Part shown: piece after piece, positions 1 to 8,224 of the stretch
Position numbering within the stretch: the stretch's first letter is position 1
Layout: every line of letters starts with the position of its first letter
Assembly: GCF_006345805.1 (NCBI RefSeq)
Contig: NW_021828476.1
Coordinates: forward strand, 1-8,224
Length of the DNA: 8,224 nt
Origin: Octopus sinensis
Taxonomy: Eukaryota
Direction: 5' to 3'
The notes under the pieces: model-generated
What the model was told of the DNA's origin: nothing
The model's database searches: none
Seen by the model: the letters and a program-made list of their open reading frames with translations, nothing else
Made by a program: the position numbers and the translations under genes

Positions 1-235
1 ATTTTCTGTATGTATGTTATGTGTTTGTAAGTCCTGGCGTTTTTGTTATGTATTTGTCTGAATAGTTTTTTATCATGCTAATGCACCTGCTGTGATAGGA
101 ATGGTTTCTGTTTTTAGATTCCACATTCTGGTTACCTCATTTCCAGGTCTTTGTATTTTGAAAGTTTCTCCATTTCTTTTAGGAACACGTTGTCATCTGC
201 CGCTATTGATACATCAATTAGAAAGCATTTTTTTT

Positions 236-237
<2 letters not shown>
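1..237 (-). mobile_element. 5'-truncated R4/Dong-clade non-LTR retrotransposon fragment (copy A), C-terminal RLE region; continues off the left edge
   Basis: Manual minus-strand translation, bridging 1-nt indels, gives KCFLIDVSIAADDNVFLKEMEKLSKYKDLE-EVTRMWNLKTETIPITAGAL-MIK..SDKYITKTPGLTN. This matches the D..K..KY..L..E..RMW...IPI..GALG pattern of R4-clade RLE domains. Near-identical to 575-799. Confidence 0.88.
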
Positions 238-292
<55 letters not shown>

Positions 293-307
293 ATTATTAT
301 TATATTA

Positions 308-353
<46 letters not shown>

Positions 354-432
354 TATTATTATTATTATTATTATATTATTATTATTATATTATTATATTA
401 TTATTATTATTATTATTATTATTATGATTATT
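238..432. repeat. (ATT)n/(AAT)n microsatellite, about 195 nt, with scattered 1-nt interruptions
   Basis: Seen directly; separates LINE copies A and B. Confidence 0.98.
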
Positions 433-843
433 CAGTAGTTTTTTTTTATAGCGTGCTTTCACTTCACTACCGAGGCAGCTTGTGTGCCTTGGTATGTTGC
501 TGTGATTTGTTTCTGTGATGACTATGATGGTTATTGTATGAAAAGTGTTCTGCGTAGGATGTGTGCAGTGCCTAGTGTGCAATTTTCTGTAGGTTATATG
601 TGTTTGTAAGTCCTGGCGTTTTTGTTATTTTTTGTATTTGTATGAATAGGTTTTATCAGGCCTAATGCACCTGCTGTGATAGGAATTGTTCTGTTTGTAG
701 ATGTAGATCTACATTCTGGTTACCTCTATTTCCAGGTCTTTGTATTTTGAAAGTTTCTCCATTTCTTTTAGAGACACGTTGTCATCTGCCGGTATTGATA
801 CACGTTGTCATCTGCCGGTATTGATTCATCTGCCAGTATTGAT
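433..843 (-). mobile_element. 5'-truncated R4/Dong-clade copy B with complete 3' UTR and a rearranged 5' junction
   Basis: Minus strand encodes the RLE C-terminus (...EMEKLSKYKDLEIEVTRM...QKIA-LGTAHILRRTL) ending at the TAA at 531-533. A 3' UTR of about 98 nt ends ...AAACTACTG and is followed directly by AATAAT. Homologous to 1-210 and 944-1151. Confidence 0.9.
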
Positions 844-867
844 TTATTATTATTATTATTATTATTG

Positions 868-943
<76 letters not shown>
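844..943. repeat. (ATT)n microsatellite, about 100 nt
   Basis: Seen directly; one ATTGAT interruption at 864-869. Confidence 0.98.
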
Positions 944-946
<3 letters not shown>

Positions 947-1151
947 TAGTTTTATTTTTATAGCGTGCTTTCACTTCACTACCGAGCGCAGCTCTGTGTG
1001 CCTTGGGTATGTGCTGTGATTTGTTGTGATGCTCTGATGGTTATTGTATGGAAAGTGTTCTGCGTAGGATGTGTGCAGTGCCTAGTAGTGCAATTTTCTG
1101 TATTTATATGTGTTTGTAAGTCCTGGTGTTTTTGTTATGTATTTGTCTGAA
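944..1151 (-). mobile_element. Short 5'-truncated R4/Dong-clade copy C (last ~36 codons plus 3' UTR)
   Basis: Minus strand reads SDKYITKTPGLTNTY-QKIALLGTAHILRRTLSIQ* (stop at 1041-1043). The 3' UTR ends ...ATAAAACTACTG|AATAAT, the same 3' junction as copy B. Confidence 0.9.
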
Positions 1152-1250
1152 ACAATATTATATTATTATCATTATTATTATTTATATGTTATTATTATTA
1201 TTATTATTATTAATTATTATATGATTATTATTATTATTATTATTATTATA
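1152..1250. repeat. Degenerate (ATT)n microsatellite
   Basis: Seen directly; 5' flank of copy C and 5' flank of the SINE at 1251. Confidence 0.9.
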
Positions 1251-1464: not shown

Positions 1465-1545
1465 TTCTTCTTCTTCTTCTTCTTCTTCTTCTTCTTCTTC
1501 TTCTTCTTCTTCTTCTTCTTCTTCTTCTTCTTCTTCTTCTTCTTC
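1465..1545. repeat. (TTC)27 perfect microsatellite at the SINE 3' end
   Basis: Seen directly. Confidence 0.98.
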
Positions 1546-1946: not shown

Positions 1947-2141
1947 TTTCTTTTATTGGCACAGGACCTAATATTTTGAAAGGGAGTCTAGTCGATCACA
2001 TTGACCCTAGCGCTCTACAGGTACTTATTTTATTGACACCTCAAAAGGATGAAAAGCAAAGTCGACCTCGGTGGAATTTAAATTCACTACGTAAAGACGG
2101 ACGAAATACCATTAAGCATTTTGTCTGGGGTGCAAATGATT
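1947..2141 (-). mobile_element. Older tRNA-derived SINE, same tail type as 1251-1464, head clipped by the adjacent trimer
   Basis: Reverse complement gives AAAATGCTTAATGGTATTTCGTCCGTCTTTACGTAGTGAATTTAAATTCCACCGAGGTCGACTTTGC...GATCGACTAGACTCCC...GGTCCTGTGCCAATAAAAGAAA, colinear with the SINE at 1251. Confidence 0.82.
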
Positions 2142-2143
2142 TT

Positions 2144-2730
2144 TATTTCTTTATTGCTCACAAGGAGCGAAACATAGAGGGGACTAACAAGGACAAACAA
2201 AGGGATTAAGTCGATTACATTGACCCTAGTACTTAATTTATCGACCCCGAAAGGATGAAAGGCAAAGTCGTCCTCGGCGGAATTTTGACTCAGATCGTAA
2301 CGGCAGACGAAATACCTATTTCTTTACTACCCACAAGGGGCTAAAATCAGAGAGGACAAACAAGGACAGACAAAAGGATTAAGTTGATTACATCGACCCC
2401 AGTGCGTAACTGGTACTTAATTTATCGACCCCGAAAGGATGAAAGGCAATGTCGACCTCGGCGGAATTTGAACTCAGAACGTAACGGCAGACGAGATACC
2501 TATTTCTTTACTACCCACAAGGGGGTAAACACAGAGGGGACAAACAATGACAGACAAACGGATTAAGTCGATTACATCGACCCCAGTGCGTAACTGGTAC
2601 TTAATTTATCGACCCCGAAAGGATGAAGGCAAAGTCGACCTCGGCGGAATTTGAACTCAGAACGTAGCGGCAGATGAAATACGGCTACGCATTTCGCCCG
2701 GCGTGCTAACGATTCTGCCAGCTCGCCGCC
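2144..2730 (-). mobile_element. Head-to-tail SINE trimer: one full head (2501-2730) plus two headless units (2317-2500, 184 nt; 2144-2316, 173 nt)
   Basis: Three colinear units, each starting TATTTCTTTA on the + strand. Only the 2501-2730 unit has the 5' head GGCGGCGAGCTGGCAGAATCGTTAGC (box A). Box B GAGTTCAAATTCC is present in two units and mutated in the third. Confidence 0.92.
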
Positions 2731-3056: not shown

Positions 3057-3097
<41 letters not shown>

Positions 3098-3320
3098 CCG
3101 ATAACTATAACAACTACCACGATGATTGTAATCATGATAATGTCGACGATGGATGCTGCTGCTGCTACTGCTGCTGCTGATCATGGTGTCGACGATTATG
3201 TTGATGATGATAGTGATGGAGATGATGGAGATGATGATAATGATAACATGACGAGGACGATGATGACAAAGAAGACGATGATGATGTCAATGATGATGAT
3301 TATGATGACCATAATGACAA
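3030..3320. repeat. Compound trinucleotide low-complexity region (GAT, GCT, GAC, ACT)
   Basis: (GAT)n core at about 3058-3097, (GCT)n at about 3153-3179, degenerate GAT/GAC around them. Confidence 0.9.
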
Positions 3321-3729: not shown

Positions 3730-3734
3730 TATAT

Positions 3735-3790
<56 letters not shown>

Positions 3791-3816
3791 TATATATATG
3801 TACATATATATAGAAG

Positions 3817-3847
<31 letters not shown>

Positions 3848-3950
3848 TATTTTACATACATATTATATATTCATATATATGTATATATATATATATGTAT
3901 ATATAATCATATATATTATATATATATCTGTATATATATATATGCATATT
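3730..3950. repeat. Interrupted (TA)n microsatellite
   Basis: Seen directly. Confidence 0.95.
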
Positions 3951-4007
3951 TGTATATAATGTATATGTATGCCTTTCTCTATGTGTTATACATCGCTATC
4001 TCCTACA

Positions 4008-4466: not shown

Positions 4467-4574
4467 TTCTTCTTCTTCTTCTTTTCTTCTTCTTCTTCTT
4501 CTCTTCTTCTTCTTCTTCTTCTTCTTCTTCTTCTTCTTCTTCTTCTTCTTCTTCTTCTTCTCTTCTTCTTCTTC
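4467..4574. repeat. Imperfect (TTC)n microsatellite
   Basis: Seen directly. Confidence 0.96.
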
Positions 4575-4577
4575 TCC

Positions 4578-5496: not shown

Positions 5497-7216
5497 ATTC
5501 ACTTCTCAGAGCTCTCAATTTCATTTACTCCGGCTAATTCTGTAAGAGCGGACAATAACCTGTTGTCAAGGCTCTCACATGGTCTCTTTCTACGATACTT
5601 AACACCCAAGTACCAATCTCAAAATTCTCGCTCTCCCTAATAAAGAGGTTTTCTGAGCTTGTTCTACCCTTATGTCAATCCCAATATCTCCAACAAGATT
5701 TCTTTGTTATTAATAGTTCTACTACTCCCACAACTACTTGGATGACAGTTCTTTTCTTCATTCATGCAATCTCACCTTTTAGAAGTTTGTACTTATCAGT
5801 CTTTTTCATTTCTTTCTCATCCACTTGTACATCCCCAGGTATGGCAATGTCTACGATCTTGGTTTCCTTCATCATTTTGTCAACTACAACAATATCTTGC
5901 TTCCGAACATCAATCGCTGAATCACACTCGATTGTAAAATCATCAGAGATCTTATACTCATTATTCTCGGTGACGCCTTCTGGATTATGTTCATATCATT
6001 TCAATGTCCCTTGTACACTGTACTTCTCACATGGTCTCCAATGAACATACTTGACTTCTTTACCTCTTTTTGTATTCTTCTTGAGCCAAATTTCTACTCT
6101 CAGTCACAATTTGTGAAACTGTTTCGTTTTTGCTGTCGCACATTATACAAAAAGGCAATTCACTATTATCTTTTTGGAACTTCGTTTAACTAGTTCTCAG
6201 AGCTTGTTCCTGAACGTTGCATATCAATCCTTCAACGCATACTTTCAGATCATTTTTCCTTACCCATCTCCAGGCAATGTTCTTCTCTTTCCTTTCTATT
6301 TTTCTGAGGCATTGTCCGTGTCGCTTTCATTTTCCAGTTGTTCAGCCTTTGTTCTCCATCTTGTTTTTTAATGCTTTTGGGTGTATTGCATTTTCACTTA
6401 ATATCGTGTTGCCATTTCTAAGAGCAACAACCAAAGTTTCAGTCTGCTGTTTGACGTACCATCCCAGACTGTTTTCCCTATTGGCAACAAAGATCTTATA
6501 TCCTACGAGACCGCTTCATCCTTTGTTTCTAGGCACATACAGTCTACCGAGATCGCTTTAAGGGTGCAGTTACTTGATAATTGTCATCCCTTTCCTGGTT
6601 TTTCTATCCATTTCCCCAAGCTCGTTCTTTGTCCATCTAACAATATGTGTACCATATCACATTAAAGAGATAGCCCATGTATCCATTGCCCTGATCTTGT
6701 TCTTTCCATTGAGTCTACTCTCCATAATTAATTCGGTTCTACTAAGGTGTTCTCACCTAAAGATATCCTTCAACTCATTCTCCTTAATTTTGTTGTACTA
6801 CAAAATACCCAGCTACTTATATCCGTCCAACACATTCTCATGCCGTTGGGTATTTCTGCAACATCAAATGAGAATGTTTTACTTTTTTAATGATAAGCAT
6901 GCTACACATTTTAATACCAAATTCCATTCCGATATCCTTACTGAATATCTGTACTATTGAAACCTGACTAATTATTTCACATTCACTCTCTTCGAAGTCA
7001 TCCATTTTTTAAGATGTACCCCGATGTCACTTACCAAGTATCTGCGTGAGGAGTACCATACAAATCACAGAGAGCAATGTGAAGTGTGCCTCCCTTGGTA
7101 TTAACCTTCGCCAGAAAGTCTCCCCATGATGTTAACTCTCTATTCCAGTTCTTCATTGATCTGACAAAATGTAAAATGTTCTTAGAAACCTTTACCAACT
7201 AAAGACTTTCTAAAAC
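5497..7216 (-). mobile_element. Decayed R4/Dong-clade retrotransposon (copy D): second half of RT, zinc knuckle, RLE and 3' UTR
   Basis: See the pseudogene feature. A ~100-nt 3' UTR follows the TAA at 5599-5601 and ends near ...GAGCTCTGAGAAGTGAA at about 5497. Confidence 0.9.
5599..7216 (-). pseudogene. Disrupted RT-RLE ORF of copy D
   Basis: Manual translation: SMKNWNRELTS; MDD (6997-7005); IFSKDIGMEFGIKMC; GYK*LGIL; LNGKNKIRAMDTWA; WTKNELGEMDRKTRK; LHP*SDLGRLYVPRNKG; WVRKNDLK..EGLICNVQEQALRT; degenerate CCHC knuckle CIMCDSKNETVSQIVTES (6096-6149); RKQDIVVVDK..KIVDIAIPGD..EKEMKKTDKY (5790-5905); QKTSLLGRARILRLVLGC*. At least 10 in-frame stops plus several frameshifts. Confidence 0.9.
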
Positions 7217-7221
7217 TCAGT

Positions 7222-7680
7222 AAGTCTTCCTCTGCAGTGCACTTTCCAGGAAGTCATCCCCTCCTTCCCTTCCTCGGATCTTTCCAGGATTACCTCCCTT
7301 CTTCCACTTCTCCCCTCCACGGAACCTTCCAGGAAATTACCCCTTCCTACAGCCCCTCCTCGGGACTTTCCAGGAAGTCTGCCTCTTCCCTCCCTCGGAA
7401 TTTTCCAGGATGTCCCCTCTGCCTCCACTTCCGCGGAAATTTCCAAGAAGTCCTTCCATCCTCTGGGTCTTTCCAGGTTATCTTGTCCCTGATCTCTGAC
7501 TTTTCCAGGTAATCTCGTTCCCAACATCGGAACTTTACTCCTTCCTCCACCTAGGATCTTTCCAGCAAGTCCTCCTCTGCACTGCACTTTCCAGGAAGTC
7601 TCACCCTCCTTCCCTCCTCGGAACTTTCCCGGAAGTCCTTCCCTTCCCCATAAGTCTCCAGGAAGTCATATCCTCCTCCT
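7222..7680. repeat. Interspersed-core tandem array: 13 near-palindromic 18-nt cores separated by variable pyrimidine-rich spacers
   Basis: Cores start at 7239, 7276, 7321, 7362, 7397, 7435, 7465, 7497, 7529 (truncated), 7554, 7584, 7620 and 7652. Consensus GGAACTTTCCAGGAAGTC; spacers 12-27 nt. Confidence 0.92.
7239..7667. promoter_or_regulatory. Putative cluster of NF-kB-like, STAT(GAS)-like and ETS-like motifs (function untested)
   Basis: Exact kB decamer GGGACTTTCC at 7362-7371, and variants GGAATTTTCC (7397), GGAAATTTCC (7435), GGAACTTTCC (7620). TTCNNNGAA at 7244, 7327, 7368, 7441, 7589 and 7626. GGAAGT in five cores. Motif match only. Confidence 0.35.
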
Positions 7681-7681
7681 T

Positions 7682-8224
7682 TCTTGATCTTACAACCATT
7701 TCCAGAGATTAGCTCATTTAATATTGATATCTCCCTTCGCAATGATTCTATCTCAATTTCAATTCTACTCCTCCAGTTTGATTTTCTTTTCGAATTTGGT
7801 ATTGCTGGCTTTTTGGGTGTTAAACAACGTCTTTCGATTACCTGAGCAACAGAGTAAATAATTTCATTTAACTTATTAATATCGGGTTTAAGTTGATGTA
7901 TGATTTCTTGTGTAACGCAGTTGCCAATTTTTATTTGTGTTTTATGTTGGTGTGCATCTGAGAGTTTATGGAGTGGTTCCCTATCATTCATATTTGTATG
8001 CCCTACAACAGCAAGCTCATTCAGAACTTCCTGCTTCATTTCAATGATAGATTTTCTGAGTTGTTCAGCATATAAGTGGTTTTCAAATTCTGTTTCGATA
8101 TCATTTTCCTGGCTGTTTTTTCTAGGGTCATTATATTTTCCTTTTTCTTCAGGCTCTTGAGTGGTTTCGGCAGATGGTCGCCTTTCAGTCAATGTTTGTG
8201 GTCCAATATTCCTCTCCTCTGCTT
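7682..8224 (-). mobile_element. Uninterrupted N-terminal (pre-RT) ORF fragment of a probable R4/Dong-clade element (copy F), open to the right edge
   Basis: The ORF-track frame 7551-8192 has no stop up to position 8224 (AEERNIGPQTLTERR...). Segments VGHTNMNDREPLHKL, DINKLNEIIYSVAQVI and NWRSRIEIEIESLRREISILNEL resemble the pre-RT region of R4-clade ORFs as I recall them. No catalytic motif lies in this piece. Confidence 0.68.

What the first reader, a model, noticed from the sequence alone, without database searches (positions are those of the whole stretch)
7239..7667. The array core is a composite NF-kB / STAT / ETS element: candidate immune-responsive enhancer inside a retroelement cluster
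Seen: core 4 reads GGGACTTTCC|AGGAAGT, the canonical kB decamer overlapping the GAS motif TTCCAGGAA and an ETS GGAAGT. Seven cores give GG-N4-TTCC decamers whose differences fall in the degenerate middle positions (GGATCTTTCC twice, GGAACCTTCC, GGAATTTTCC, GGAAATTTCC, GGGTCTTTCC, GGAACTTTCC), besides the exact one. Six cores retain TTCNNNGAA, including TTCCCGGAA at 7626-7634. Established: Rel/NF-kB binds GGRNNYYCC-type sites, STATs bind TTCN3GAA, and both families exist in molluscs. Inference: a homotypic cluster like this could act as an infection- or cytokine-responsive enhancer, either host-derived, viral/LTR-derived or exploited by a retroelement. Repeat amplification alone would also multiply a chance motif.
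Basis: partly seen in the sequence, partly recalled or inferred. Interest (0 to 1): 0.7.

Follow-up and report, generated by a model that had tools for sequence, protein, structure and literature searches.

The report
Minisatellite grown from decayed LINE fragment
A roughly 475-base degenerate tandem repeat in an octopus genome, apparently grown from a decayed retrotransposon reverse-transcriptase remnant, happens to spell NF-kB/STAT/ETS-like motifs, and nothing available here shows it works as an immune enhancer.

Summary
There are eight GG-N4-TTCC decamers, one exact GGGACTTTCC at 7362, and six TTCN3GAA sites in the array, including TTCCCGGAA at 7626. All of them lie in one degenerate tandem array (7204-7679) of 12 clear units spaced 29-57 bp apart, plus two degenerate units.

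The array lies between two LINE pieces on the minus strand. Above it is an open 5' fragment, 92.8% identical to an Octopus vulgaris copy, whose homology stops at about 7680. Below it is a heavily decayed reverse-transcriptase (RT) remnant.

The terminal unit (7226-7204, GACTTACTGAGTTTTAGAAAGTC) still reads in frame as the RT motif-A region (RKTY / VLESL against KKAY / IIESM in a relative). The array core equals this unit minus 7 nt and with one substitution. The TTCC-N-GGAA palindrome therefore looks like an accident of RT decay that tandem duplication then multiplied.

The kB "GG" is no better kept than the kB centre. The GAS N3 positions are kept as well as the contact positions. What is conserved is one contiguous 9-mer, TTTCCAGGA, and only marginally (about 2% of duplication-history simulations).

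Enhancer activity cannot be tested here and has no support. Interest is low.

The parts
7204..7679 (-). Whole degenerate tandem array. It has 12 clear units, one truncated unit and the terminal 'unit 0'. The plus strand is pyrimidine-rich and the minus strand is the sense strand of the flanking LINE pieces.
   Evidence: TRF scores only 7354-7453 (period 35, 76% matches).
7204..7226 (-). Unit 0, GACTTACTGAGTTTTAGAAAGTC. It is both the terminal array unit and the in-frame RT remnant (..K-T-Y-stop-V-L-E-S-L..). It lacks the kB and GAS motifs.
   Evidence: The split pattern GACTTNCTG-N(0-10)-GAAAGTC occurs only here and at core 4 (chance about 7e-7 per 100 positions). VLESL against IIESM scores 16, reached by 0 of 14,272 window pentapeptides. 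RKTY against KKAY has p about 3.5e-4. BLASTP alignment.
7235..7255 (+). Core 1, CAGTGCACTTTCCAGGAAGTC (GAS and GGAAGT, no kB GG).
7273..7293 (+). Core 2, CTCGGATCTTTCCAGGATTAC (relaxed kB only).
7318..7338 (+). Core 3, CACGGAACCTTCCAGGAAATT (relaxed kB and GAS).
7359..7379 (+). Core 4, CTCGGGACTTTCCAGGAAGTC. It is the only strict kB decamer and also carries GAS and GGAAGT.
7394..7414 (+). Core 5, CTCGGAATTTTCCAGGATGTC (relaxed kB only).
7432..7452 (+). Core 6, CGCGGAAATTTCCAAGAAGTC (relaxed kB and GAS).
7462..7482 (+). Core 7, TCTGGGTCTTTCCAGGTTATC (relaxed kB only).
7494..7514 (+). Core 8, CTCTGACTTTTCCAGGTAATC (none of the three motifs).
7526..7546 (+). Truncated unit (..ATCGGAACTTTACTCC..) that has lost the CCAGGAAGTC half. 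It accounts for the 57-bp spacing.
   Evidence: read from the sequence
7551..7571 (+). Core 9, CTAGGATCTTTCCAGCAAGTC (relaxed kB only). In the block alignment it is the counterpart of unit 0.
7580..7600 (+). Core 10, CACTGCACTTTCCAGGAAGTC (GAS and GGAAGT).
7617..7637 (+). Core 11, CTCGGAACTTTCCCGGAAGTC (relaxed kB, TTCCCGGAA and GGAAGT).
7647..7667 (+). Core 12, CCCATAAGTCTCCAGGAAGTC (GGAAGT only).
7218..7301 (+). Higher-order block A, duplicated as block B (7563-7646).
   Evidence: 77% ungapped identity. About 86% with gaps: 8 substitutions and 4 indels over 86 columns.
7563..7646 (+). Higher-order block B, a copy of block A.
7680..8224 (-). The 5' (N-terminal ORF) fragment of a younger LINE-like element. 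It is open from the window edge. It breaks off at about 7680, and its frame then reads through the array to a stop at 7551-7553.
   Evidence: 83% amino-acid identity to O. vulgaris P0001. 92.8% nucleotide identity to L001 10353-10908. Homology ends after GATCAAGAAA.
6123..7216 (-). Decayed non-LTR reverse-transcriptase remnant, running from the motif-A region through the MDD box and thumb to the C-terminal zinc-knuckle region. It has many stops and frameshifts.
   Evidence: tblastn of P0002-P0005 gives E down to 2e-50 over 7005-6123. BLASTP over 7216-7082 against the L122 RT piece gives E=4e-11. That L122 piece hits Pfam RVT_1 at E=1.4e-10 and R2 retrotransposon RT structures at E=1e-10.
5640..6122 (-). 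Probable continuation of the same decayed LINE (C-terminal tail, e.g. DIAIPGDVQVDEKEMKKTDKYK).
   Evidence: Reading of the translations only. This is inference from recalled LINE C-terminal motifs and has no tool hit.

Best explanation
The feature is an old, degenerate minisatellite that grew by tandem duplication out of the 5'-truncated end of a decayed LINE reverse-transcriptase (RT) remnant in an octopus genome.

The seed was about 36 nt of RT motif-A-region coding sequence, GCACTGCAGAGGAA-GACTTACTGAGTTTTAGAAAGT on the minus strand, encoding ..A-L-Q-R-K-T-Y-stop-V-L-E-S... One copy lost 7 nt (AGTTTTA) and took an A-to-C change, giving GACTTCCTGGAAAGTC. On the plus strand this reads GACTTTCCAGGAAGTC. 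That accident created the TTCC-N-GGAA palindrome.

Depending on its neighbours, the palindrome reads as a STAT/GAS site, an ETS GGAAGT or half of a kB decamer. Slippage or unequal exchange then multiplied the unit to about 13 copies. A roughly 345-bp higher-order duplication added to it, and the purine/pyrimidine-rich spacers drifted in length.

The motif cluster is therefore a by-product of amplifying one chance palindrome. The array most likely has no regulatory role.

Shown here: the array anatomy, the LINE flanks, the relation between unit 0 and the core, and the RT homology of unit 0. Inferred: the order of events, neutrality, and how the younger LINE 5' fragment came to be joined at a purine-rich microhomology near 7680.
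For: All motif copies sit in one head-to-tail array with variable spacing.

The flank directly below the array on the minus strand is RT. BLASTP gives E=4e-11 and E=4e-12. tblastn reaches E=2e-50. The relative hits RVT_1 at 1.4e-10 and R2 RT structures at 1e-10.

Unit 0 matches the core as GACTTNCTG-[7 nt]-GAAAGTC, a pattern found nowhere else in the window except core 4. Both of its halves are in frame and collinear with RT residues KKAY..IIESM of the relative (0 of 14,272 pentapeptides, and 3.5e-4).

The junction GAAAGT|GCACTGCAG between unit 1 and unit 0 is what a tandem duplication of that RT segment would produce.

The substitution pattern does not follow the kB or GAS degeneracy. In the most recent duplicate pair, differences are not visibly depleted in the cores.

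The array is not coding. Only 4 of 11 spacings are multiples of 3, all frames carry stops, and no protein homologue was found.

A random 21-mer of window composition carries all three relaxed motifs at about 1e-6. That implies thousands of chance occurrences in a genome of several gigabases.
Against: The 9-mer TTTCCAGGA is better kept (93.5%) than its immediate flanks (72-81%). Fisher gives 8e-5. Only 0.1% of independent-unit simulations and about 2.4% of duplication-history simulations reach this. That is a marginal hint of constraint, or of mutational bias, which pure neutrality does not explain.

RT homology of the first residues of unit 0 rests on one distant relative (L122). At nucleotide level it is detectable only from about 7192 downward.

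Unit 9 aligns as the counterpart of unit 0 in the higher-order block yet lacks the 7 nt.

No other genomic copy or orthologous locus could be fetched. Single-locus origin and neutrality are therefore not demonstrated.
Confidence: 0.6

Rival explanations
1. The array is an immune-responsive enhancer. It acts as a homotypic cluster of Rel/NF-kB, STAT and ETS sites that octopus factors bind after infection or cytokine signalling, driving a nearby gene or the retroelement.
For: Good matches exist: one canonical kB decamer, 8 relaxed kB, 6 GAS (including the optimal-looking TTCCCGGAA) and 5 GGAAGT. The TTTCCAGGA block is marginally over-conserved. Cephalopods express NF-kB p105 and c-Rel homologues (PMC4361686). 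TE-derived inducible enhancers are known in mammals (from my own knowledge).
Against: The kB GG is no better kept than the kB centre (p=0.77). The GAS N3 is as conserved as the contacts (p=0.71). Four of 12 units lack GG, 6 of 12 lack GAS, and only 2 units carry all three motifs. The palindrome originates from a deletion junction in decayed RT coding sequence. No host gene is recognisable in the 8.2-kb window; there are only repeats, microsatellites and LINE debris. No functional data are available.
Confidence: 0.05
2. The array is a binding-site array for some other single sequence-specific protein that recognises about 9-11 bp, (C)TTTCCAGGA(A). Candidates would be a host zinc-finger repressor targeting TE debris, or a transposase-type subterminal repeat.
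For: Conservation is one contiguous block rather than split half-sites. MITE-like elements in metagenome contigs carry many TTTCCAGGA copies in their subterminal regions, so such motif arrays do exist as protein-binding repeats elsewhere.
Against: Those contigs share nothing with the window beyond the 9-mer. No terminal inverted repeats or transposase lie nearby. The conservation signal is only about p=0.02 once relatedness of units is allowed.
Confidence: 0.07
3. The array is the internal VNTR of a dispersed composite, non-autonomous retroelement family with the layout LINE 5' part - VNTR - LINE 3' part, in the manner of SVA. It would then not be a single-locus minisatellite.
For: The younger 5' LINE fragment is joined directly to the array at a purine-rich microhomology, and its ORF runs on into the array. 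Internally deleted LINE derivatives exist in O. vulgaris (L001).
Against: The only related copy retrieved (L001) has no array and continues with normal LINE sequence past the breakpoint. The 3' part is far more decayed than the 5' part and belongs to a different lineage from L001's 3' part.
Confidence: 0.12
4. The array is a pre-existing genomic minisatellite unrelated to the LINE, and two LINE fragments happened to land or be truncated next to it.
For: LINE 5' truncation next to arbitrary DNA is common. Nucleotide-level RT homology starts only at about 7192.
Against: Unit 0 is at once a core relative and in-frame, collinear RT sequence. That coincidence is very unlikely.
Confidence: 0.12
5. 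The array is a protein-coding tandem repeat on the minus strand, with peptides such as D-F-L-E-S-x-E-E-G.
For: The LINE frame stays open for 44 codons into the array. ORFs of 125 and 67 aa overlap the array.
Against: Unit spacings are 38, 45, 41, 35, 38, 30, 32, 57, 29, 37 and 30, so the motif rotates through all three frames. Every frame has stops. Changes are not biased towards third codon positions. No homologous protein appears even at E<=10.
Confidence: 0.02

Closest known systems
Minisatellites / VNTRs arising inside or at the edge of transposable-element remnants (for example the VNTR of SVA, or tandem monomers at LINE 5' ends)
   Same: Head-to-tail units of tens of bp. Variable unit length. 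Higher-order duplication. The unit is derived from adjacent TE sequence. One strand is purine-rich.
   Different: Here the seed is RT motif-A coding sequence at a 5'-truncated end, not a UTR or monomer promoter. Copy-number polymorphism and family-wide presence could not be tested.
TE-derived inducible immune enhancers (for example mammalian LTR families carrying STAT/IRF sites) and classical tandem kB enhancers such as the Ig-kappa intronic enhancer or the HIV-1 LTR enhancer
   Same: Clustered kB- and GAS-like motifs within retroelement-derived DNA. One unit carries the textbook decamer GGGACTTTCC.
   Different: Those elements carry the sites in the family consensus, in a promoter or LTR. They have documented binding and inducible chromatin, and their half-sites are conserved. 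Here the motifs lie in decayed LINE coding debris, half-site conservation fails, and there are no functional data.
Non-LTR (LINE) retrotransposons with an R2-like or RVT_1 reverse transcriptase
   Same: The flanks are LINE pieces: an N-terminal ORF region, RT palm/thumb, and a C-terminal zinc-knuckle region.
   Different: No piece is intact. The endonuclease and the RT N-terminal half are missing between the two fragments. The two fragments differ in age and lineage.
Subterminal repeat arrays of MITE-like DNA transposons seen in metagenome contigs
   Same: Multiple copies of TTTCCAGGA at irregular spacing.
   Different: No further sequence similarity. The window has no terminal inverted repeats. 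All copies here share one orientation and have CT-rich spacers.

Membership tests
NF-kB / Rel binding site (kB) | Match to the canonical decamer GGGRNWYYCC | tested here: not met
   Only 1 of 12 units matches (7362 GGGACTTTCC).
NF-kB / Rel binding site (kB) | Relaxed GG-N4-TTCC in each unit | tested here: inconclusive
   8 of 12 units match. Units 1, 8, 10 and 12 lack the 5' GG.
NF-kB / Rel binding site (kB) | Both half-sites conserved while the centre is free to vary | tested here: not met
   TTCC has 1 of 48 cells mismatched. GG has 5 of 24, against 13 of 48 for the centre (p=0.77).
NF-kB / Rel binding site (kB) | Binding by a Rel-homology-domain protein | not testable with these tools
   Needs EMSA, DAP-seq or ChIP with octopus Rel/p105.
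STAT / GAS element | TTCN3GAA palindrome | tested here: inconclusive
   6 of 12 units match.
STAT / GAS element | Contact triplets conserved more than the N3 spacer | tested here: not met
   Contacts have 7 of 72 cells mismatched, N3 has 2 of 36 (p=0.71).
ETS site | GGAA core with the GGAAGT flank | tested here: inconclusive
   GGAAGT is present in 5 of 12 units. The GGAAGT positions have 12 of 72 cells mismatched.
TE-derived inducible enhancer | Accessible or acetylated chromatin, inducible activity, and a responsive target gene nearby | not testable with these tools
   No chromatin or expression data. No host gene is recognisable in the window.
TE-derived inducible enhancer | Motifs present in the TE family consensus and shared by many copies | tested here: not met
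   The one related LINE copy (L001) lacks the array. The RT relative L122 has KKAYD..IIESM and no palindrome. Only two relatives were available.
Minisatellite / VNTR | Head-to-tail repeats of about 10-100 bp in several copies | tested here: met
   12 clear units plus 2 degenerate ones, spaced 29-57 bp apart.
Minisatellite / VNTR | Copy-number polymorphism between individuals | not testable with these tools
   No population or second-assembly data were reachable.
Non-LTR retrotransposon (LINE) remnant, as flanking context | Reverse-transcriptase homology | tested here: met
   Shown via relatives: tblastn E=2e-50, RVT_1 at 1.4e-10 and R2 RT structures at 1e-10. The window pieces themselves are too decayed for a direct Pfam hit.
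Protein-coding tandem repeat | Reading frame maintained across units, and homologous proteins exist | tested here: not met
   4 of 11 spacings are divisible by 3. Every frame has stops. No homologues were found.

The most novel reading that the evidence does not exclude
A palindrome created by chance in decaying LINE reverse-transcriptase sequence was amplified into a 12-13-copy array, and octopus Rel, STAT or ETS factors (or another TTTCCAGGA-binding protein) now use it as an inducible enhancer. This would be a cephalopod example of de novo enhancer birth from TE coding debris by tandem amplification.
Probability: 0.04. Interest if true: 0.6.

Novelty: new member of a known kind. Interest (0 to 1): 0.15.

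Why it matters
As it stands this is an ordinary piece of repeat debris, a degenerate minisatellite between two LINE fragments. Its main use is as a caution. A striking "composite immune element" can arise from one accidental TTCC-N-GGAA palindrome, because the kB, GAS and ETS consensus sequences all share the GGAA/TTCC core, and tandem duplication then multiplies it. The traceable origin of the palindrome, a 7-nt deletion junction in RT motif-A codons, is a neat illustration of how TE decay can create factor-like sites. If the array did prove to be bound and inducible, it would document enhancer birth from TE coding sequence in a cephalopod, a group with almost no functional cis-regulatory data.

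Tried and rejected
- **Coding repeat:** translated all six frames. The motif rotates through the frames and there are stops everywhere. A protein search with the 125-aa array ORF found nothing at E<=10.
- **Direct Pfam search of the flanks:** no hit, because they are too decayed. Solved through relatives instead.
- **Other genomic copies:** exact-ORF look-ups failed. The viral-contig pattern scan gave 0 hits. The metagenome scan gave more than 120 hits, all unrelated tandem repeats or MITE-like arrays sharing only the 9-mer. L001 and L122 carry no array.
- **Hairpin or cruciform-driven expansion from the near-palindromic core:** single-strand DNA folds are weak (-1 to -3 kcal/mol, z between -0.9 and +0.8). 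No support.
- **Rfam and tRNA scans of the window:** nothing.
- **Literature:** no paper links GGGACTTTCC to oyster. The O. vulgaris repeat-annotation paper (PMC13282606) does not mention such an array.
- **Core against spacer differences in the youngest duplicate pair:** too few differences to decide.

Full report
**1. The observation**

GGGACTTTCC followed by AGGAAGT lies at 7362-7378. Seven further GG-N4-TTCC decamers lie at 7276, 7321, 7397, 7435, 7465, 7554 and 7620. Six TTCN3GAA sites lie in the array, including TTCCCGGAA at 7626-7634.

Against dinucleotide shuffles of the window, the cluster is far from chance:
- GGNNNNTTCC: 13 found against 2.04 expected, reached by 0 of 200 shuffles.
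- TTTCCAGGA with at most one mismatch: 15 against 1.96, reached by 0 of 200.
- TTCNNNGAA alone: 7 against 2.79, reached by 6 of 200.

These copies are not independent. All belong to one degenerate tandem array.

**2. Anatomy of the array**

Scoring the window against a 21-nt register CTCGGAACTTTCCAGGAAGTC finds 12 units. They start at 7235, 7273, 7318, 7359, 7394, 7432, 7462, 7494, 7551, 7580, 7617 and 7647. Nothing comparable occurs elsewhere in the window.

Start-to-start spacings are 38, 45, 41, 35, 38, 30, 32, 57, 29, 37 and 30 bp. The 57-bp gap holds a truncated unit at about 7526-7546. Between the cores lie C/T-rich spacers of 8-24 nt.

The array is so degenerate that Tandem Repeats Finder scores only 7354-7453 (period 35, 76% matches). 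There is higher-order structure: 7218-7301 and 7563-7646 are copies of one block, 77% identical ungapped and about 86% with gaps. The real extent is 7204-7679.

**3. What surrounds it**

The window is octopus DNA. The minus-strand frame from the window edge (8222) down to the stop at 7551 is open. Its first 72 residues are 83% identical to an Octopus vulgaris predicted protein, P0001. Window 7670-8224 is 92.8% identical at nucleotide level to that locus, L001 (OX597823.1).

L001 is an internally deleted LINE-like copy. Its 5' ORF runs on past the point where the window breaks off (..LISGNDVRSRKGRK..KQKVQAKAQRIRRFEKR..). Further along it carries the C-terminal part of such elements, shown by tblastn of P0005 against L001 11076-11297 at E=2.7e-6.

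In the window, homology to L001 stops after GATCAAGAAA at about 7680. The next bases are the first purine-rich spacer of the array, in a short stretch of purine-rich similarity. A 1-nt insertion about 15 nt upstream has already shifted the frame.

Below the array on the minus strand lies a much older, heavily broken non-LTR reverse transcriptase:
- Window 7005-6123 matches four relatives (P0002-P0005) by tblastn, with E down to 2e-50.
- KMDDFEESECEI..DIGMEFGIKMCS aligns to the N-terminus of P0002 (E=4e-12).
- VLESL..SMKNWNRELTSWGDFLAKV (7216-7082) aligns to the RT piece just upstream of P0002 in locus L122 (E=4e-11).
- That L122 piece hits Pfam RVT_1 above threshold (E=1.4e-10, 41.6 bits).
- It also hits solved R2 retrotransposon RTs (E=1e-10).

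The window pieces themselves are too decayed for a direct Pfam hit. The L001 3' part and the window 3' part share no nucleotide similarity, so the two LINE pieces flanking the array differ in lineage and age. There is no LTR or viral feature here.

**4. Where the core comes from**

On the minus strand the array ends with ...GACTTCCTGGAAAGT|GCACTGCAGAGGAA|GACTTACTGAGTTTTAGAAAGTC|TTTAGTTGG.... The last element, 7226-7204, is called unit 0 here. It equals the core GACTTCCTGGAAAGTC with 7 extra bases (AGTTTTA) and A in place of C.

The split pattern GACTTNCTG-N(0-10)-GAAAGTC occurs only there and at core 4. The chance expectation is about 7e-7 per 100 positions.

Unit 0 is also RT sequence. In the same frame as the rest of the remnant it reads ..A-L-Q-R-K-T-Y-stop-V-L-E-S-L... 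This is collinear with ..V-D-Y-K-K-A-Y-D-(MIPHSW)-I-I-E-S-M.. of the L122 relative. That stretch is the region of RT motif A; this assignment comes from established knowledge of RT motifs and was not directly scored here.

- VLESL against IIESM scores 16 in BLOSUM62, reached by none of 14,272 pentapeptides translated from the rest of the window.
- RKTY against KKAY is reached by 3.5e-4 of them.

RT sequence shared with another species must be ancestral, so the core descends from the RT and not the reverse. The junction GAAAGT|GCACTGCAG is what a tandem duplication of the segment GCACTGCAG...GAAAGT would create.

On the plus strand, GGAAGTC is the complement of the K-T-Y codons, and GACTTTCC is the complement of the E-S-L codons. 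TTCCAGGAA spans the 7-nt deletion junction. Unit 0 itself has no kB or GAS match. The "composite element" therefore did not exist in the RT. It was made by a small deletion plus one substitution in dead coding sequence, and was then multiplied.

Three caveats apply. Nucleotide-level homology to L122 is detectable only from about 7192. Only one relative covers this region. Unit 9, which pairs with unit 0 in the higher-order block, lacks the 7 nt.

**5.

Per-position identity across the 12 units, for positions 1-21 of CTCGGAACTTTCCAGGAAGTC, is 11, 6, 9, 8, 11, 8, 8, 8, 11, 11, 12, 12, 12, 11, 11, 11, 10, 9, 8, 11, 11 out of 12.

| Positions | Cells mismatched |
|---|---|
| kB 3' half TTCC | 1 of 48 |
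| kB 5' GG | 5 of 24 |
| kB centre | 13 of 48 |
| GAS spacer N3 | 2 of 36 |
| GAS contact triplets | 7 of 72 |
| GGAAGT | 12 of 72 |

The kB 5' GG is no better kept than the centre (p=0.77). The GAS N3 is kept as well as the contact triplets (p=0.71).

What stands out is one contiguous 9-mer, TTTCCAGGA, at 93.5% identity against 72-81% for its flanks (Fisher 8e-5). After choosing the best window post hoc, 0.1% of simulations with independent units reach this. About 2.4% of simulations in which units share a duplication history reach it. This is a marginal signal.

The signal fits a single roughly 9-11-bp site, or a mutational or homogenisation bias, better than three overlapping factor footprints. 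In the youngest duplicate pair, differences are not visibly depleted in the cores, but there are too few to decide.

**6. Chance and look-elsewhere**

kB, GAS and ETS consensus sequences all contain GGAA/TTCC, so one TTCC-N-GGAA palindrome goes most of the way to all three. A random 21-mer of window composition carries any one of the relaxed motifs at about 0.2-0.6% each, any two at 2.4e-4, and all three at about 1e-6. In a genome of a few gigabases that means thousands of chance composites. Only units 4 and 11 carry all three.

**7. Other readings tested**

- **Coding repeat (D-F-L-E-S-x-E-E-G):** rejected. Only 4 of 11 spacings are divisible by three, every frame has stops, changes are not biased to third positions, and no protein homologue exists at E<=10.
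- **Viral or LTR origin:** no support. There were 0 hits in viral contigs, and the flanks are LINE.
- **Hairpin-driven slippage:** folds are weak and no better than shuffles.
- **Related arrays elsewhere:** a metagenome scan for three spaced TTTCCAGGA copies returned more than 120 contigs. They are unrelated tandem repeats and MITE-like subterminal arrays that share only the 9-mer.
- **Source contig and paralogues:** neither could be reached through exact-protein look-ups.

**8. Verdict**

This is a degenerate minisatellite, most likely seeded by decayed RT motif-A sequence, that amplifies an accidental palindrome.

Cephalopods do have Rel and p105 (PMC4361686), so in-vitro binding to a few units would not be surprising and would not by itself show function. 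An enhancer role remains possible at a few per cent. Deciding it needs genome-wide copy and orthologue comparisons, chromatin data and binding or reporter assays.

Noticed in passing
window 2053-2714 and 1316-1402: SINE-like units of about 184 bp lie in tandem (2.5 copies at 93%, plus partial copies). An inverted partial copy lies about 1 kb upstream. There is no tRNA or Rfam hit.
   Followed up: partly
window 1-1250: Three direct repeats of about 510-590 bp (96-98% identical segments at 18/597/1107, 139/728 and 522/1032). Each is followed by a long (ATT)n tract. This suggests tandemly duplicated element tails.
   Followed up: no
window 1465-1545, 4467-4575, 3730-3970, 3057-3308: Unusually long microsatellites: (TTC)27 and (TTC)37, a (TA)n tract of about 240 bp, and (TGA/GAT)n. 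Most of the first 5 kb is low-complexity sequence.
   Followed up: no
window ~7692 (against L001 ~10881): A 1-nt insertion in the younger LINE 5' fragment lies about 15 nt before the array junction. It shifts the frame, so the LINE ORF reads 44 codons into the array before the stop at 7551-7553.
   Followed up: partly
L001 10001-12440 (O. vulgaris OX597823.1): The annotated 'hypothetical predicted protein' P0001 is a gene model built on an internally deleted LINE copy. It has the 5' ORF region joined to the C-terminal region, and the RT is missing.
   Followed up: partly
L005, L006, L029, L037, L013, L025, L027 (metagenome contigs): These are MITE-like families, probably from eukaryotic hosts. 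Their termini resemble CAGGGTTCGTACAGAC... or ...GTTGTAGACACCCTG, and their subterminal regions carry many irregularly spaced TTTCCAGGA copies. They are unrelated to the window apart from the 9-mer.
   Followed up: partly
window 7551-7571 against 7204-7226: Unit 9 is the positional counterpart of unit 0 in the higher-order block alignment, and both have a non-C base at core position 6. Unit 9 nevertheless lacks the 7-nt TAAAACT that unit 0 keeps. Gene conversion or a parallel deletion would be needed to explain this.
   Followed up: no
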